A stretch of DNA of 64,000 nt from contig OZ260666.1 in NCBI GenBank assembly GCA_965285935.1, forward strand, positions 38,936,001 to 39,000,000, in the 5' to 3' direction. A model generated the notes under the pieces. The model was given only the letters and a program-made list of their open reading frames with translations, had not been told where the DNA came from and ran no database searches. Position 1 is the first letter of the stretch; every line of letters starts with the position of its first letter. Below are positions 55,101 through 62,690 of this stretch, piece after piece. The DNA is from Ophelia neglecta (lineage: Eukaryota). A program made the translations under genes and the position numbers.

Positions 55101-58100
55101 GTTCAGGGTTCTTGAACATACTTTGGTTTTTGCATTCCGGCTTTTAACAGTTCTCTTACTTCAGCTCCCCAGTCCGAGTTACTGGCCTGAGCTTGGAGAG
55201 GGCCTCTGTAAACAAGTCAATATCAAAATTACTTGTAGGTCATGATGTCAAATAGCCTGGTTTCAATATAAACATGTAAATAAAGTAATTACGTATATTA
55301 ATATATGTCTCCAGCAATGATTATAAAATATGCCCATAGCTTCATCAAAGCTAACTGTCCCAGTTTCTGAGAATAATGGTGACTTGGCTTATAACAGTTG
55401 GTCTACTTTTTAAGACATGTTGCAGTCAAGTGGTTTGGGGTCCAGCCTTTACTTACTTGAGATCAAAGTTCTCTGGGTAGCTGGAGGTTTCTGTCCTGGG
55501 GTAGCTGATATAACCTTGTGTATACAATCTCTCAGCAATCTGCATTGCATGGTGGGGACTTATACCTATCATAGATAATGAAAGTGAATGAATTTTAGGT
55601 GTGAAACTATAGATGTGATTGTCTGAATCTTACAGCCAAATTCATTGTATTGTTTGTAAATGGTGTAGTGCTGTACAGAAGTTTTGATGACATGAAATTG
55701 TAACTCAGGATCAGGTTGATTGTATTATTAATGCAGACCTAATCCTGAACTGCAGGCTTTCAACATCTCTACGGTGTTCAGTGCCATTGGCCGGGCTTTA
55801 GTCTTCTCCTTCTGAACTACATTCACAATCCTATCAAACAGAAAATGCTGATTTTTTTACCAAGATATAATGCATTTAGTTGCCAAAACATGATATATTT
55901 AAAGTCTCAATTATCGGTCTCAACATGAGACACAATTAATGAACTAACGTTATTGTAGTAAATACAATATATTGTAACAGTCAGTGAACATACAGAGGAG
56001 TAGGATATGTCATCATTACAAACTCAGTACCTGGCTTTGTCATTTCCTTTCACAGTGTTTAAAAACATCTGTGCTACTTCCCGGTCAAACAGACGGACGC
56101 GATCCCAGTCCAGGTTCAGTGTCTTGCCTCCAGGGTGTGTCACCTGATAAGAACATGATTATTATTATTAGTTTTTCATGCTTTGACACTGGATAATCAT
56201 AAATAATGTGCAATCTGATACCAGGAATTATAGTAAATGACCCATTATCACAATTTTATTCTTGTAGACTCACCTGTACTTGCAGCACCCAATATGTCTC
56301 TGGTTTAAATGACTGAATTTTGTCATGTCTCTCTACACAGAAGCCCAATGTGGGGGTCTGACATGGTCCGTAAGAGATCAGAGTACTGTCCAGGTCACCA
56401 TATTTACCCTGAATGCATTAATCAAACACATTAATTTTACTTTCTATCACCACAATATGAAACATACTGCATAGAACAAAATTCTTGCCACGAATTAAGA
56501 ATACCCTTGTGAATAGAAACATATTGAAATAAACTTTTACCTGAAAGAATTTGGTTTGGTATCTTGTAAATGCACATCCTATTCTGAGATCTAACTCTTG
56601 TCTGGCATCAACAGACAAGGATTCATTCTTATTTGGGGTAATCAATGAGCCAAAGGCTCTCTTAACATCAGTGTCTGTGATAGAACTGAACTTGGCTCGA
56701 AATATAGTCTGAAATTGAACACAAAATGATAATGTTAATTTAAGAGGGATCTCTAAATGCAATAGTCAGTGTCTTAGGTCTTTACCTACTTAACATGTCT
56801 GCCAAACAATGCAAGATGTTGAAGTCTGAAAAAACTTTGAGACTTTTAGTATAAAACGTAACTAAATCTTGTGTATGACTGATCCAATATGAATTAAAAA
56901 CACATTCATTTGCTCAAATTTGTGTACATGTATTACTAATTTGATGGTACACTAACATGTGTACATTTTACAAATGATAATCATCGTTTGACACTCACCT
57001 GTTCATTGCCCCTTGGTCTGTTCATCACAGGCCGTATGCAGTCTAACACTTCAAAACAAATATTTTCACCTTCTTTGTCACAATCAAGCCACAGTATAAC
57101 ATAGTCACACCCTCTGGCCTGGAATGCAAATCACTAAATAACAAAAACTATGAAAATTAAAGAATAATTCAAATAACAATAGCCATTGATACAAATGTAC
57201 TATTCCTTGTTACAGTAGAATTTTGACAGTTTTTTTTAAACAGAAATGGTATATGTATGTGACATACTTACCTCCTTCTCCAAAAAGCTTGGCATATGTA
57301 AGTTGGTAGATGCTTCTTTCTTTTGAGTAGGAGCAGTGAAAAGTTCAGCCTGAAGAGAATATTTGAATAAGAGTTGGAATGTTTTCTTTCAAAACAAGCA
57401 ATAAAAAACAGGCAAAACAGGCTAAAAGGTAAAACCTAATTATATGTAATTTATGCAGCTTGCAAACTTGGATTCCATGGTTCTTATTCAAAATCATCAA
57501 AATAGCAGCTATATTACCATCAATTGCTAGGTGGCATGGATCGTATTGTGTTAAGTTGAGGGAAAGGCCTTTATTAATTAAAATTTGGTCTAAACATACT
57601 ATATAGCACATACCGAACATGATAAAGGGGTTATTTCACAAAATTAATAGTTTTTAGGGGTTATTCCGGGTTATTTCGATATTTCAAAGGTTATTGCGTT
57701 GTTTCGCCAGACCGCCTCAGGGGCACACAGGGCCCAGCGATGTACTCCAATACATGGCTAGGGCAGCTATCCTCTGTGGTAACGTATATCTTTAAATAGA
57801 GTACATTTTTCATAATGATGCTATCCAATATATCCCTTGTTCAAAAGGCCCCCCTTTATAATACAAAAAGTTGTTCCCATACATCAAAAAACAGAAAAGG
57901 GTAAGTTTTTGAAAAGGAAATGCACTCCGCACAGAACAGAGTGAGAAAAAGCATGTTTTTTGATCCGGCAACTTAACAGCTTAAGTCTTCTTGTCCGATG
58001 TGTGGCAGTCTTCAATGCCATCAAGTTGGCAGCTGGTATTATTTCATTTGTTTTGGAACCCGTAGTATTCAAAGACGCATACTATCTATGTTTTAATGTT

Positions 58101-58559
58101 TAACATCTTTTACCGGCTGGTGTTCTTGTATCCCAAAATTAGGGTATGTAATTTCAACATTTAAATCCTGCTATGGGTAGGATTTTTCATGTTCACACTT
58201 TAGCTTGGGACCCCATTTGAGATTTGACTGCCCCCCCCCCCCCCCTCCGTGTATAAAAAATACTTTATGATTTTAATGTGCGGGAGGGGTATTTTATTGA
58301 CAGCGGCATAAATACTTACAGGGTCTACTTTATCCCAGTTGTTGTATTTGCCTATAAAATCTAGATTCATGACATGACCGCATACTGATGTAAATTTGAA
58401 ACGAACAGTTTCGCTTGTAGCAGGAAAGCGACCGGTGAATTCATGAATGGAACAAGCACCATTTGAGCCTTTCCTAGACGAAAGTTGGCCATTGGACAAG
58501 ATTTTTGCTAGTGACTGCGCTAGCGACGGCTTCTCCGCAATCATAAATGCCGACTTCAT
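52128..58559 (-). CDS. TOP3B: DNA topoisomerase 3-beta (type IA DNA/RNA topoisomerase), complete multi-exon CDS
   Basis: Exons (minus): 58559-58320, 57349-57272, 57118-56999, 56708-56541, 56408-56274, 56143-56031, 55830-55739, 55565-55457, 55205-55122, 54923-54803, 54583-54401, 54208-53999, 53806-53589, 53410-53230, 52941-52742, 52596-52494, 52361-52128. Motifs: [63 protein letters not shown], catalytic [10 protein letters not shown] (Tyr codon 55501-55503), [23 protein letters not shown] zinc-ribbon repeats, RGG box and C-terminal [10 protein letters not shown], which is characteristic of TOP3B rather than TOP3A. Confidence 0.97.
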
Positions 58560-58697
58560 TGTAAGATTATCATTAATATCCTTAAATAATCTTGAAAATA
58601 AAAATATTTTGGTCTTCGTTAGCCCTTTGCTAACTGTACCGGAAGTGTGGATATTATGATTCTAGAGCCAAACGAGCAACTGCAGTACACTTAATCG
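58560..58697. promoter_or_regulatory. TOP3B-proximal half of a putative bidirectional TOP3B/MCM9 promoter
   Basis: Lies between the TOP3B ATG and the transposon. Consensus ETS/GABP site CCGGAAGT at 58639-58646, a motif typical of head-to-head housekeeping promoters. Confidence 0.5.
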
Positions 58698-60707
58698 GGT
58701 AGAACCTAAACCCCGGAGGTAATTCGGCGGAGCTATGCACTTACATGTATAAGCTCCGCCGGCCGCGGAGCTATGCACTTACATGTATAAGCACGATCTC
58801 GCGGAGCTATGCACTTACATGTATAAGGATTTTGAAAGCGCGGAGGTCGCGGAGGTAGACTTGAAAACACATATGCCGGAATTTTAAGCAAATTTTTACT
58901 TCTTTGCGGGTTCAGCTTTTGGATTTTTTTTGCATGCCTGATAAATTTATAATTAACATATAACATTTCAGAATAAAAACGGCTCCCTAGTAAACTTTAA
59001 GCAGCCAATGAGCCGTTATATTACAAAGGTCGCAAAACGTCAGAGACACCATATTATTGACAGCCGGCTGACGTAGATGTGCCAGTGTTTTTATGGTTTC
59101 TTGTGTCTATTCGTTTATATTTTTTTATGTATGCCATTGAAATGGACGTAATGGTATACCATTTAATTGTGCATTATAGTATGCCATTAAATTGTGCTTT
59201 AACCAAAGTTTGATTGATCCTTGTTTCATTCAGTTTTAAACCACAGTATAAGGTCCTCATGTACATCAATTGTATGGGATTATATGCAAGTGGCTAATGA
59301 CTTTAAGTGCTTTACACTTGTCCTCTATTATTTGTTTATAAGTAACTTATGGATTGAACGTATGATGTGTCATCTAGATGTTTTGTGCCAGAATGATCAT
59401 AATAATATATTTATTTTGAAAATGAAACTTAAATATGCATGCAGTTTAATGTCGATGTGGAAAACCTTCCCTGTCAAAAAAGGTCCATATATAGATTGGA
59501 AGTTATAAATAATGCCATTAATTGATTCGTGAGAGTATAAAGTTCAGGGTTCATTCATTGGTGGATTATTGTTTTAACACATTAAACTGTGTCACAAACT
59601 AAGAGGCAATTGAGCAATTGGGTGTGTTTGCCAATTATTCCTTAGAAGCACCAACACCTTTTATTATTATTAATCTTTATTCCTCCAATGAAAGGAGAGT
59701 ACAAGTAATCGAGAAAAAATACGAATTATTTAATAATGCAAGGGAATTATTTAAATCAAATAATAATGTGAAAATATAATATGTATATTTTAGGAACAAA
59801 AAATATGCTAATGAAAGAAACAAAACTCTTTGTGCTATATAAACATTCTACAAAATTACAATATGTTTATGACAGTTTTGGTTTTTGTTGCTTCATATTT
59901 CTAGAAAAAAAACTGTTTGGACTGTGAGACCCATTGGATTATTTGCCACACATAGATAGAAATGTTAGGACAAGGAAAAATGTCTTCCTAAATGGGTACC
60001 TCCTAAATGTCTTCCTAAATGATAGAGGATACAAGGGGTAAAATATTGTTTTGAACTTCTGTGTTTATTTTTCTATTTTCTAGAAGGAAAAATCCAACAC
60101 ATTTTCTTTCCAATGATACATATAGATATCTATATGTTTAATATCGAAATATATGTTCGGTGTGGTTTGAAACTGAATGAAACAAGGATCAATCAAACTT
60201 TGGTTAAAGCACAATTCAATGGCATACTATAATACATAATTAAATGGTATACCATTACGTCCATTTCAATGGCATACACAAAAAAAATTATAAACGAATA
60301 GGCACAAGAAACCATAAAAACACTGGCACATCTACGTCAGCCGGCTGTCAATAATATGGTGTCTCTGACGTTTTGCGACCTTTGTAATATAACGCCTCAT
60401 TGGCTGCTTAAAGTTTACTAGGGAGCCGTTTTATTCTGAAATGTTATGTTAATTATAAATTTATCAGGCATGCAAAAAGAATCCAAAAGCTGAACCCGCA
60501 AAGAAGTAAAAATTTGCTTAAAATCCCGGCATATGTGTTTTCAAGTCTACCTCCGCGACCTCCGCGCTTTCAAAATCCTTATACATGTAAGTGCATAGCT
60601 CCGCGAGATCGTGCTTATACATGTAAGTGCATAGCTCCGCGGCCGGCGGAGCTAATACATGTAAGTGCATAGCTCCGCCGAATTACCTCCGCGGTTTAGG
60701 TTCTACC
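58698..60707. mobile_element. Non-autonomous foldback/Mutator-like (MULE) DNA transposon with very long TIRs
   Basis: Left arm 58698-59245 is the reverse complement of right arm 60161-60707 (about 13 differences counted by eye). Termini GGTAGAACC...GGTTCTACC. Direct repeat ACTTAATCG at 58689-58697 and 60708-60716 (alternatively read as 11 bp CACTTAATCGG). Three subterminal copies of CGGAGCTATGCACTTACATGTATAAG per arm; ~915-bp AT-rich non-coding centre. Confidence 0.92.
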
Positions 60708-60911
60708 ACTTAATCGGAAGGCAATAAAATAGTCGTGTCAGGATGTGACGAACAAGGCGGGAAGTGACAAAATTGTCAGAACGCTCACAATGCTGTAGAA
60801 ATATCGTTTGCAATGTTTCGCGAACTAAGTAATTATTAATGACAGTTGCAAAAAATATGCTACACAAATACAGTTGATCTGAACGGTGGTTTATAGCTAC
60901 AAAACTAAAAG
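60708..60911. promoter_or_regulatory. MCM9-proximal half of the putative bidirectional promoter
   Basis: CpG-retaining segment with E2F-like GGCGGGAA (60756-60763, overlapping GGAAGT) and TTTCGCG (60816-60822) upstream of the predicted MCM9 ATG. Confidence 0.45.
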
Positions 60912-62690
60912 ATGGACCTCACTGAAAGTTTCCAAATTAGAGCTACCCAAAAAACTGAAAACGACAAAATTACAGGTAGGCCTAAATTAAAAGATATTAA
61001 ACTGGTAAACATGCATTAAGTATGAATATTTTAATATCTTTCATGGTCAAGGGTGGGGGGTGGGGGGATCTTGGGCTTGTCGTTCACGCTTAATAAGCGA
61101 CTCCTCTCCTCTCTCCCCCATTTATTTAGGTATCAGGACGTTCCGTCCCCAAACCAGTCCGGCCCCTAGTCGATCCGGCCCCATAACCTTAGTCGATCCG
61201 TCCCCACTCCCTTAGTCGACCCGGCCCCTGACGTTTTACATATTAATTGCATTTAGCATTATTAACGCCTAAGAAAGATGTGCTCGCTGCCATGTTTGAC
61301 ACTTGTCATGTCCTACCTGCTCATCAACCTAGGCAAGTGCAATCTATTGATGGTCCCAAAACGACCCCAAAGTGATACATGTAATTAATCTTTAGAATGG
61401 TAAACACCGAAACCGACCAAAACCGAGAAGAAACACCGAAACCCTCTGAAACTGGGGCCAATCTGGTAGTTATTTGGTTGAATTGCTTATGGACGTGGGT
61501 AATATTTGTAGACGAACAATTTCCGAGGCGCTTGGCACGCCTGTTTTCATTTTAGTATGCCAAAAAACAAATTTACGATGTAATGTGCGGAAAACAGGCT
61601 GTATCTACAGTAATATACACTATACACTGAAGTGTTCGTAGGCTGATAGACGGGCCAGTTCAACTAAGGAAGAGGGGACGAATCAACCAAGGTAGTGGGG
61701 ACGGACCGACTAGGGGCCGAAGAGGTTTGGGGACGGAACATCTAGAAAGCTTTATTTAGGGGGGGGGGGGGTATTATTATTTAATTATTGCCATAGAGCG
61801 TGGGGGGGTATTTATTTACTTGGGGGGGTTTCAGTGTAAATTTTAATACATGTACCTTCATTCCTTGGACCTTGCCCATCCTATAACCCAAGACTCCTAA
61901 CCCATCCTCTTTACCACGTTAAATTCAAATTGGCCCTTGATCAATTAACTCTATCAACACTACCACCCTCTACTGAAGGTAGATATCCCTTTAGTTACAG
62001 ATTTTCAGAGTTGAAAGGGTTAATGATACCCATGCTTATTTGCACATCCTTAAAATGTAGCATAAAAACTGTATGGGTGTTCCATTTGATTTATCACTAA
62101 ACAGGTAGTTTGGATTGGGGACTGTTTGTTTATATTTACCCCCCCCCCCCAACACGTCCCCTACCTCCCCCCCTGTGGTGGAAATCTTTCCTACACCTTC
62201 TTTTTTCCAGTATGCAGCTAGTTTGATAATTGTTGAATAATAAATGAACAACCCCTAAGTGATAGGGGGCTACATATCATATTTATAACCTAATATTTTA
62301 CTTGTAGAAGATTTAGAAAGTTATGTGTTAGAAAACCACCGCATAGATCTACTTGGAATTCTAGAGGAGGAAGACTTAGGTGAACATCATGCAGTTGTTA
62401 TAAAGTAAGGGAAAAACTTCCATTTGGAAATATCTGACTTTTAAAGGTATTATCATCTTTATGCTTCTAGATTAATTATTTTGCATACCAGAATATACTT
62501 TCAAAATAAGTGAAATAGCCATACTTTGGTATAAAATTCCAGTGCCTTAAACCTCCTTGAAAGTAATGTCATCCTTGGAGATTCACTGCTGTCCAATCCT
62601 CGGAAGGTACTTCCCCTGTTTGATACTGCCTTGAGAAGAGCTCAGAAAGTTGTTTTGGACAGCATTCCTGCCCAGGAGAAGAATGACTTG
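60912..62690 (+). CDS. MCM9: DNA helicase MCM9, first three coding exons (3'-partial; the gene continues beyond the window)
   Basis: Not in the ORF track. Exons 60912-60975, 62308-62404 and 62543-62690 join in phase to give MDLTESFQIRATQKTENDKITEDLESYVLENHRIDLLGILEEEDLGEHHAVVINALNLLESNVILGDSLLSNPRKVLPLFDTALRRAQKVVLDSIPAQEKNDL. This aligns with the recalled MCM9 N-terminus ([44 protein letters not shown]). The first exon is the least certain. Confidence 0.85.
61129..61750. mobile_element. MITE / non-autonomous TIR element in MCM9 intron 1
   Basis: Imperfect ~100-bp inverted ends (GGTATCAGGACGTTCCGTCCCCAAACC... / ...GGTTTGGGGACGGAACATCTAGAAAGC) with subterminal TAGTCGATCCGGCCCC repeats. Flanking direct repeat TTTATTTA at 61121-61128 and 61751-61758. 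Superfamily uncertain. Confidence 0.85.

What the first reader, a model, noticed from the sequence alone, without database searches (positions are those of the whole stretch)
58689..60716. Young 2-kb foldback transposon splits a compact TOP3B/MCM9 bidirectional promoter and presents mirror-image sequence to both genes
Seen: ~548-bp TIRs about 97-98% identical, an intact ACTTAATCG target duplication, and no transposase. The element lands ~140 bp from the TOP3B ATG and ~200 bp from the predicted MCM9 ATG, so removing it leaves only ~330 bp between the start codons. Each arm carries a CCAAT box (GCAGCCAATGAG near 59001, mirrored near 60400), TGACGT and CpG-rich 26-bp repeats, so both genes now face the same 550 bp. 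Established: long TIRs with 9-11-bp TSDs typify MULE/foldback elements, and Mutator elements favour 5' gene regions and can carry outward-reading TIR promoters. Inference: the insertion may uncouple, or symmetrically re-drive, two genome-maintenance genes. It could also form a long hairpin or dsRNA that attracts silencing.
Basis: partly seen in the sequence, partly recalled or inferred. Interest (0 to 1): 0.8.

Follow-up and report, generated by a model that had tools for sequence, protein, structure and literature searches.

The report
Segregating MULE transposon in TOP3B/MCM9 promoter
A 2-kb non-coding copy of a recently mobile Mutator-type "jumping gene" sits between the start sites of two genome-maintenance genes, and reads from the species still contain the uninterrupted version, so it is a fresh, ordinary transposon insertion whose effect on the two genes is untested.

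Summary
Window 58698-60707 is a 2,010-bp element with 548-bp inverted arms (97% alike), a perfect 9-bp target duplication and no ORF. It lies 138 bp from the TOP3B ATG and 204 bp from a candidate MCM9 ATG; both genes were verified.

It is one of about 135 copies in the 762-Mb genome. Copies are 96-99.6% alike, and 21 of 24 examined have perfect 9-bp duplications.

I found the autonomous partner on another chromosome. It is 7,482 bp with the same ends and a 9-bp duplication. Its single 1,161-aa ORF carries a MULE DDE domain, a SWIM finger, a Ulp1 protease domain and a PHD-like finger, plus a minisatellite: a Rehavkus-like Mutator element.

Contigs from the only public sample holding this locus join 58687 directly to 60707. 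The empty allele therefore exists and the insertion is not fixed.

Flanks of 19 independent copies show CpG observed/expected falling from 0.79 next to the insertion to 0.40 at 1.5 kb. This suggests the family targets unmethylated, promoter-like DNA.

The claimed effects on expression (uncoupling, symmetric re-drive, silencing) could not be tested because no RNA data were available. Each gene keeps its proximal upstream DNA, which contains motifs resembling ETS or E2F sites.

Verdict: a new member of a known kind, of moderate interest.

The parts
58689..58697 (.). left copy of the 9-bp target site duplication
   Evidence: identical to 60708-60716
58698..59245 (+). left terminal inverted repeat, 548 bp
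   Evidence: 97.6% identical to the right arm of the autonomous copy
58727..58828 (+). three subterminal 28-nt repeat cores at 36-38 bp spacing; inferred transposase binding sites
   Evidence: family D2; conserved in diverged subfamilies
59052..59116 (+). 65-bp block holding TGACGT; nearly invariant across 7 arms that are otherwise 86-97% alike
59246..60160 (.). non-coding internal region, derived from subterminal parts of the autonomous element
59660..59805 (.). 146-bp segment specific to the 2.0-kb subfamily; absent from the 1.87-kb copies and from the autonomous copy
   Evidence: (joint 59659 to 59806)
60161..60707 (-). right terminal inverted repeat
60708..60716 (.). right copy of the target site duplication
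58323..58559 (-). TOP3B first coding exon, ATG at 58559
   Evidence: matches residues 2-78 of solved TOP3B chains at E 3.7e-33, against TOP3A at 2e-5; Toprim domain
58638..58647 (.). ETS/GABP-like motif in the native TOP3B-side upstream DNA, 50 bp from the insertion
   Evidence: read; motif assignment from my own knowledge, not tested
60756..60823 (.). two E2F-like motifs (60756-60766 and 60816-60823) in the native MCM9-side upstream DNA
   Evidence: read; motif assignment from my own knowledge, not tested
60912..60975 (+). candidate MCM9 exon 1 (ATG, 64 nt, phase 1, consensus donor)
   Evidence: joins in frame to the acceptor at 62308; inference, no transcript evidence
62308..62404 (+). MCM9 coding exon 2; contains no ATG
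   Evidence: resembles the MCM9 N-terminus as I recall it
62543..62690 (+). MCM9 coding exon 3
   Evidence: downstream MCM exons on the same strand match human MCM9 at E 4.6e-31, against MCM8 at 3e-12

Best explanation
The element is a non-autonomous internal-deletion derivative of a 7.5-kb Mutator-superfamily (Rehavkus-like) DNA transposon. It has no gene of its own. It is moved in trans, by cut-and-paste, by the 1,161-aa transposase of an autonomous copy on another chromosome (G000:C2:901674-909155). That enzyme presumably recognises the shared termini and the subterminal 28-nt repeats, and it makes a 9-bp staggered cut. This copy landed in the 334-bp divergent upstream region shared by TOP3B and MCM9. 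It did so recently enough that the uninterrupted allele still exists. The site was probably not random, because the family's insertions cluster in short islands of CpG-undepleted DNA. Each gene keeps its own proximal upstream DNA (138 bp and 204 bp). My expectation is therefore that the insertion is tolerated, with at most a modest cis effect.

Shown: the anatomy, the family, the partner, the 9-bp duplication and the empty allele.
Inferred: mobilisation in trans by that particular copy, the target preference, and the mild effect.
For: - Arms and duplication.
- Copy number: about 270 termini against 0 in the control.
- The whole 2 kb is repeated at 96-99.6% identity, with deletion variants.
- 21 of 24 copies have perfect 9-bp duplications, with a weak S-T-W5-M-S target pattern.
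- The autonomous copy has the same terminal sequence and a 9-bp duplication, and the non-autonomous consensus maps onto its two ends.
- Its ORF has MULE and Peptidase_C48 domains and a weak PHD match. D337, D402, E518, the CxxH motif, the SWIM cysteines and the protease H/D/Q/C residues are all conserved against 8 relatives.
- Relatives with MULE + C48 + PHD occur in bivalves and mites.
- The empty allele appears as a joint from 58687 to 60707, with 11 shared letters, in all three runs. One 1,606-bp contig spans both flanks.
- The copy differs by 0.85% from the family consensus and is 99.55% identical to an independent copy.
- There is a CpG gradient around 19 independent insertions. Near versus 750-1500 bp gives p = 0.0016, and the flanks are unique sequence.
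Against: - All three read sets come from one sample and are contigs. Allele frequency, zygosity and presence of the filled junction in those reads cannot be read.
- The empty allele could in principle be a precise excision product, though that is rare for this kind of element.
- Only 40 of 2,370 candidates were scored in the transposase search, so 'one intact copy' is a lower bound.
- The CpG test used 19 sites and a non-random background.
- The zinc-binding histidine of the PHD-like finger is replaced by phenylalanine in all five copies read.
- No transcript data support the MCM9 exon 1 model or either transcription start site.
Confidence: 0.85

Rival explanations
1. The insertion rewires expression. 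Outward-reading promoter activity in the two identical arms now drives, or co-drives, both genes symmetrically. Alternatively, the 2-kb spacer uncouples a formerly shared bidirectional promoter.
For: Both genes face the same 548 bp, which holds CCAAT and TGACGT. A 65-bp block around TGACGT is nearly invariant across diverged subfamilies, so it is probably functional for the element. Outward-reading promoters are known for maize Mu1 ends (my own knowledge).
Against: The motifs lie 300-370 bp inside the arm. Their order (CCAAT, TGACGT, T-rich stretch) points inward, toward the element interior. That is the arrangement expected for the transposon's own promoter, as in MuDR. Each gene keeps native proximal DNA with ETS-like or E2F-like motifs. 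No RNA run was available.
Confidence: 0.12
2. The element acts as a silencing nucleus. Its arms form a long hairpin or double-stranded RNA that attracts small-RNA or methylation-based silencing, which spreads into both promoters.
For: The predicted single-strand DNA fold is -740 kcal/mol, against about -184 for shuffles. 538 of 548 left-arm bases pair with the right arm. About 135 near-identical copies could supply small RNAs in trans.
Against: There are no small-RNA or methylation data. The flanks show no CpG depletion (observed/expected about 1.0), but the insertion is too young for that to be informative. Many copies sit in similar CpG-rich sites, which suggests such insertions are tolerated.
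Confidence: 0.15
3. The structure is an assembly artefact (a hairpin chimera or a collapsed repeat) rather than a real insertion.
For: Short-read contigs from the sample show the uninterrupted junction. No listed contig was seen to bridge the filled junction.
Against: A misassembly does not create a perfect 9-bp duplication at exactly the family's canonical termini. Twenty other copies have the same architecture. In two runs the contigs break exactly at 60707 with a 30-letter overlap, which is what a graph branch caused by a second (filled) allele would produce.
Confidence: 0.02
4. It belongs to another superfamily with 8-9 bp duplications (Merlin/IS1595, hAT or P) rather than Mutator.
For: Merlin elements make 8-9 bp duplications and their ends begin with GG (my own knowledge). 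The genome holds IS1595-type transposase relics.
Against: The only coding element that shares these termini, the subterminal repeats and the internal sequence encodes a MULE-domain transposase.
Confidence: 0.02

Closest known systems
Rehavkus group of Mutator-related transposons (Repbase; summarised in PMC6446971, Table 1)
   Same: 9-bp duplication, TIRs of hundreds of bp, a single transposase ORF with a C-terminal PHD-type finger, a minisatellite inside the element, and invertebrate hosts.
   Different: The arms are longer (470-548 bp against 26-400 bp). The minisatellite lies 5' of the ORF rather than before the 3' TIR. The PHD-like finger lacks its histidine. A Ulp1 protease domain and SGNH-hydrolase-like pieces are present. 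Placement in a tree with Repbase Rehavkus sequences was not tested.
Ulp1-carrying Mutator transposons of hydra, lancelet and plants (KI-MULEs; PMC2836005)
   Same: A MULE transposase fused to, or accompanied by, a Ulp1 C48 protease domain and a PHD finger.
   Different: At most 38% protein identity to any database relative. This family is documented here with its non-autonomous derivatives and a segregating insertion.
Maize MuDR with non-autonomous Mu1-type elements
   Same: Long TIRs, 9-bp duplication, non-autonomous copies mobilised in trans, and a bias toward gene 5' regions (PMC6446971 states the bias toward genes).
   Different: An animal host, one ORF instead of mudrA plus mudrB, much longer arms, and extra protease and finger domains.
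Drosophila Foldback (FB/NOF) elements
   Same: Long inverted arms, a 9-bp duplication and an affinity to MULEs (my own knowledge).
   Different: FB arms are built almost wholly of tandem repeats and vary in length. Here there are only three short subterminal repeats per arm and the rest is unique sequence.

Membership tests
Mutator-like elements (MULE superfamily) | target site duplication of 8-11 bp (PMC6446971) | tested here: met
   exactly 9 bp in 21 of 24 copies
Mutator-like elements (MULE superfamily) | long terminal inverted repeats, commonly hundreds of bp | tested here: met
   548 bp, 97% identical
Mutator-like elements (MULE superfamily) | an autonomous partner with the same ends that encodes a MULE-domain DDE transposase | tested here: met
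   L039:174-7655; PF10551 at E 3e-7, above the cut-off; D, D, E and CxxH conserved
Mutator-like elements (MULE superfamily) | mobility (filled and empty sites) | tested here: met
   empty junction 58687 to 60707 in three runs of one sample; transposition itself not assayed
Rehavkus | PHD finger in the transposase | tested here: inconclusive
   PF00628 at E 0.006, 17 bits, below the cut-off of 24; cysteines conserved but the histidine ligand is phenylalanine in 5 of 5 copies; relatives carry PF00628
Rehavkus | minisatellite before the 3' TIR | tested here: inconclusive
   a minisatellite of about 740 bp at L039:4346-5082, but on the 5' side of the ORF
Rehavkus | transposase groups with Repbase Rehavkus sequences in a tree | not testable with these tools
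   no Rehavkus reference sequences were available by reference
Drosophila-type Foldback elements | arms composed mainly of tandem repeats | tested here: not met
   only three 36-38-bp units per arm
Pack-MULE | host gene fragments captured between the arms | tested here: not met
   the interior maps to the autonomous element's own subterminal DNA; no ORF over 95 aa; about 290 bp of the interior remains unassigned
Merlin/IS1595 | an IS1595-type transposase bounded by these ends | tested here: not met
   10 PF12762 hits in the genome, none linked to these termini; the linked transposase is a MULE

The most novel reading that the evidence does not exclude
The family is active now in this animal. 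It homes to unmethylated promoter islands, perhaps through the C-terminal finger and Ulp1 module of its transposase. The filled and empty alleles at TOP3B/MCM9 would then be a natural experiment: a 2-kb perfect palindrome inserted in the middle of a bidirectional promoter measurably changes the co-regulation of two genome-maintenance genes.
Probability: 0.25. Interest if true: 0.55.

Novelty: new member of a known kind. Interest (0 to 1): 0.35.

Why it matters
Active cut-and-paste transposons are uncommon in animals. Here a complete system is laid out: one apparently intact autonomous copy, about 135 young non-autonomous copies, a defined 9-bp target, and an insertion that is still segregating. 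That makes the family a candidate for transposition assays and for studying promoter-directed integration. The TOP3B/MCM9 site offers filled and empty alleles of a compact divergent promoter, so cis effects of a long palindromic insertion can be measured directly in heterozygotes. The insertion itself is ordinary transposon biology.

Tried and rejected
- The longest terminus pair (5.7 kb, L031) was tested as an autonomous candidate. It is a family copy with a nested LINE carrying an endonuclease/reverse-transcriptase ORF of 1,023 aa.
- Three other long pairs (L032-L034) are diverged relatives without a transposase.
- Merlin was considered because of the 9-bp duplication and the GG ends, and dropped.
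- The Pfam MCM_N search did not find the MCM9 N-terminal exons. They were found by reading open frames.
- The bacterial promoter/terminator scan is not meaningful for this genome and gave fewer sites than shuffles.
- Rfam found nothing in 58000-62000.
- Only DNA contigs of one sample were available, with no RNA run.
- The MCM9 exons were examined one by one and not joined into a spliced protein for any search.
- The organism was not identified and its name was not needed.

Full report
**Observation**

Two inverted arms, 58698-59245 and 60161-60707, align at 97% identity. They are bounded by a direct 9-bp duplication at 58689-58697 and 60708-60716. In this copy two further flanking bases also match, so 9 to 11 bp would fit. 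The family settles it at 9 (see below). The interior has no ORF above 95 aa. The CCAAT and TGACGT motifs and the subterminal repeats are present. The repeats are three 28-nt cores per arm at 36-38-bp spacing.

**Flanking genes**

- TOP3B: the minus-strand exon 58323-58559 matches residues 2-78 of solved TOP3B chains at E 3.7e-33. TOP3A matches only at 2e-5.
- MCM9: MCM-domain exons lie on the plus strand 6.7-13.8 kb beyond the window end. One of them matches human MCM9 residues 441-509 at E 4.6e-31, against MCM8 at 3e-12.
- MCM9 N-terminal exons are in the window at 62308-62404 and 62543-62690. Exon 2 has no ATG, so the start codon must be in an upstream exon.
It joins in frame to the acceptor at 62308. 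It is a sound model without transcript support.
- I examined the exons one by one and did not join them for any search.
- Without the element the two ATGs are 334 bp apart.

**The family**

- The left arm finds 302 candidate places in the 762-Mb genome. The 40 that were scored are all 96-100% identical.
- The terminal 30-mer, with up to 3 mismatches, matches 134 forward and 136 reverse places. The reversed control matches none. That gives about 135 elements.
- The whole 2 kb is repeated, not just the arms. Deletion variants of 1.3-1.87 kb exist.
- Of 24 distinct copies, 21 have perfect 9-bp duplications. All are different, and they show a weak pattern that is A/T-rich in the centre with G/C at the edges.
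- Nine full-length copies are 0.6-1.2% from their consensus. The window copy is at 0.85% and is 99.55% identical to an independent copy on another chromosome.
- The consensus arms themselves differ by 1.5%. About half of the arm-to-arm differences in this copy are therefore inherited, and arm identity is not an age measure.

**The autonomous partner**

A search for MULE domains in the genome gave one hit in a 1,162-codon open frame, 4 kb from an unpaired family terminus. The region L039:174-7655 (G000:C2:901674-909155) is a 7,482-bp element. It has the same termini, arms of 469 and 486 bp, and its own perfect 9-bp duplication.

The non-autonomous consensus maps onto its two ends, with the coding interior missing.

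The single ORF (L039:806-4291, minus strand) has these features:
- MULE and Peptidase_C48 Pfam domains.
- A sub-threshold PHD match.
- Against eight relatives it keeps the DDE residues, the CxxH motif, a SWIM finger and the protease catalytic residues.
- The PHD histidine is phenylalanine in all five copies read. This is a family trait, not damage to this one copy.
- A minisatellite of about 740 bp lies 5' of the ORF.

Among the hits scored, this is the only full-length open copy. The others are fragments or carry stops.

Database relatives are at most 38% identical. They include bivalve and mite proteins with MULE + C48 + PHD.

The literature describes Rehavkus as having a 9-bp duplication, TIRs of 26-400 bp, a PHD finger and a minisatellite (PMC6446971). 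It also reports Ulp1 and PHD domains in animal Mutator transposases (PMC2836005). The element is therefore a new member of a known kind.

**The empty allele**

Only three runs, all from one sample and kept as contigs, hold this locus.
- All three contain a joint from 58687 to 60707 that skips 2,019 bp and has 11 shared letters.
- In one run a 1,606-bp contig covers 57600-58687 and continues at 60707-61155.
- This is exactly the uninterrupted site with one copy of the duplicated 9-mer.
- The assembly carries the filled site, so the insertion is heterozygous or polymorphic.
- In two runs the contigs break exactly at 60707 with a 30-letter overlap. That is what a graph branch from a second allele would give. 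Contigs cannot prove this.
- Other joints in the same table correspond to the 1.87-kb subfamily.

**Target preference**

- In the flanks of 19 independent copies, CpG observed/expected falls steadily from 0.79 in the first 250 bp to 0.40 at 1,250-1,500 bp.
- Near versus 750-1,500 bp gives p = 0.0016.
- The flanks share no sequence with one another or with the element, so nesting in repeats is not the cause.
- Three of the sites have a CCGGAAGT core within 500 bp; by my estimate about 0.2 would be expected by chance.
- This suggests insertion into short unmethylated, promoter-like islands, in line with the known gene-proximal bias of Mutator elements (PMC6446971).

**Likely consequence**

- The insertion point lies between an ETS-like motif on the TOP3B side (58638-58647) and two E2F-like motifs on the MCM9 side (60756-60766 and 60816-60823). 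Each gene keeps its proximal DNA. These motif calls rest on my knowledge of the consensus sequences and are not tests.
- Inside the arm, the order going inward is CCAAT, then TGACGT, then a T-rich stretch. A 65-bp block around TGACGT is nearly invariant across subfamilies that are otherwise 86-92% alike. This fits an inward-reading promoter of the transposon rather than an outward one.
- A single strand of the element would fold into an almost perfect 538-bp stem, at -740 kcal/mol against about -184 for shuffles. Hairpin or double-stranded RNA formation is physically plausible but unobserved.
- No RNA, methylation or small-RNA data could be reached. Uncoupling, re-driving and silencing remain hypotheses. 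I rate a tolerated insertion with little effect as most likely.

**Verdict**

The functional reading is open. The finding is a well-documented example of ordinary transposon biology. It has some value as an apparently active animal MULE system and as a natural filled/empty promoter pair.

Noticed in passing
L039:5375-6474 (minus strand), inside the autonomous element: Three collinear open pieces upstream of the transposase ORF give weak matches to the GDSL/SGNH hydrolase family, covering profile positions 65-141 and then 136-176. One Mytilus relative of the transposase also carries this domain. This could be a second gene, upstream exons or a captured fragment.
   Followed up: partly
L031:1654-4725 (G000:C2, inside a family copy): An open 1,023-aa endonuclease/reverse-transcriptase ORF of a LINE is nested in a copy of the family. 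That LINE has therefore also moved recently.
   Followed up: partly
window 61108-61771: A second inverted-repeat element (120-nt arms, 77% alike, with 23-bp tandem repeats) lies in the predicted MCM9 intron 1. Its word depth in the reads is in the thousands, so it is a high-copy repeat.
   Followed up: no
L035:1300-1910 (about 5.3-5.9 kb beyond the window end): Open frames in an MCM9 intron look to me like the C-terminal part of a PIF1/Helitron-type helicase relic. This was judged by eye only.
   Followed up: no
L035:7284-8984, minus strand: ORFs of 149 and 213 aa, which look ankyrin-like by eye, lie antisense between MCM9 exons. This may be a nested gene.
   Followed up: no
G000:C1:73906643, 73918316 and 73930000; also C2:116494834-116744225: Family termini on the same strand recur at even spacing of about 11.7 kb. 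This suggests tandem segmental duplications that each carry a copy.
   Followed up: no
window 58231-58257: A homopolymer run shows a 2-bp length difference in one run, and contigs break there. This points to heterozygosity or a sequencing difficulty next to TOP3B exon 1.
   Followed up: no
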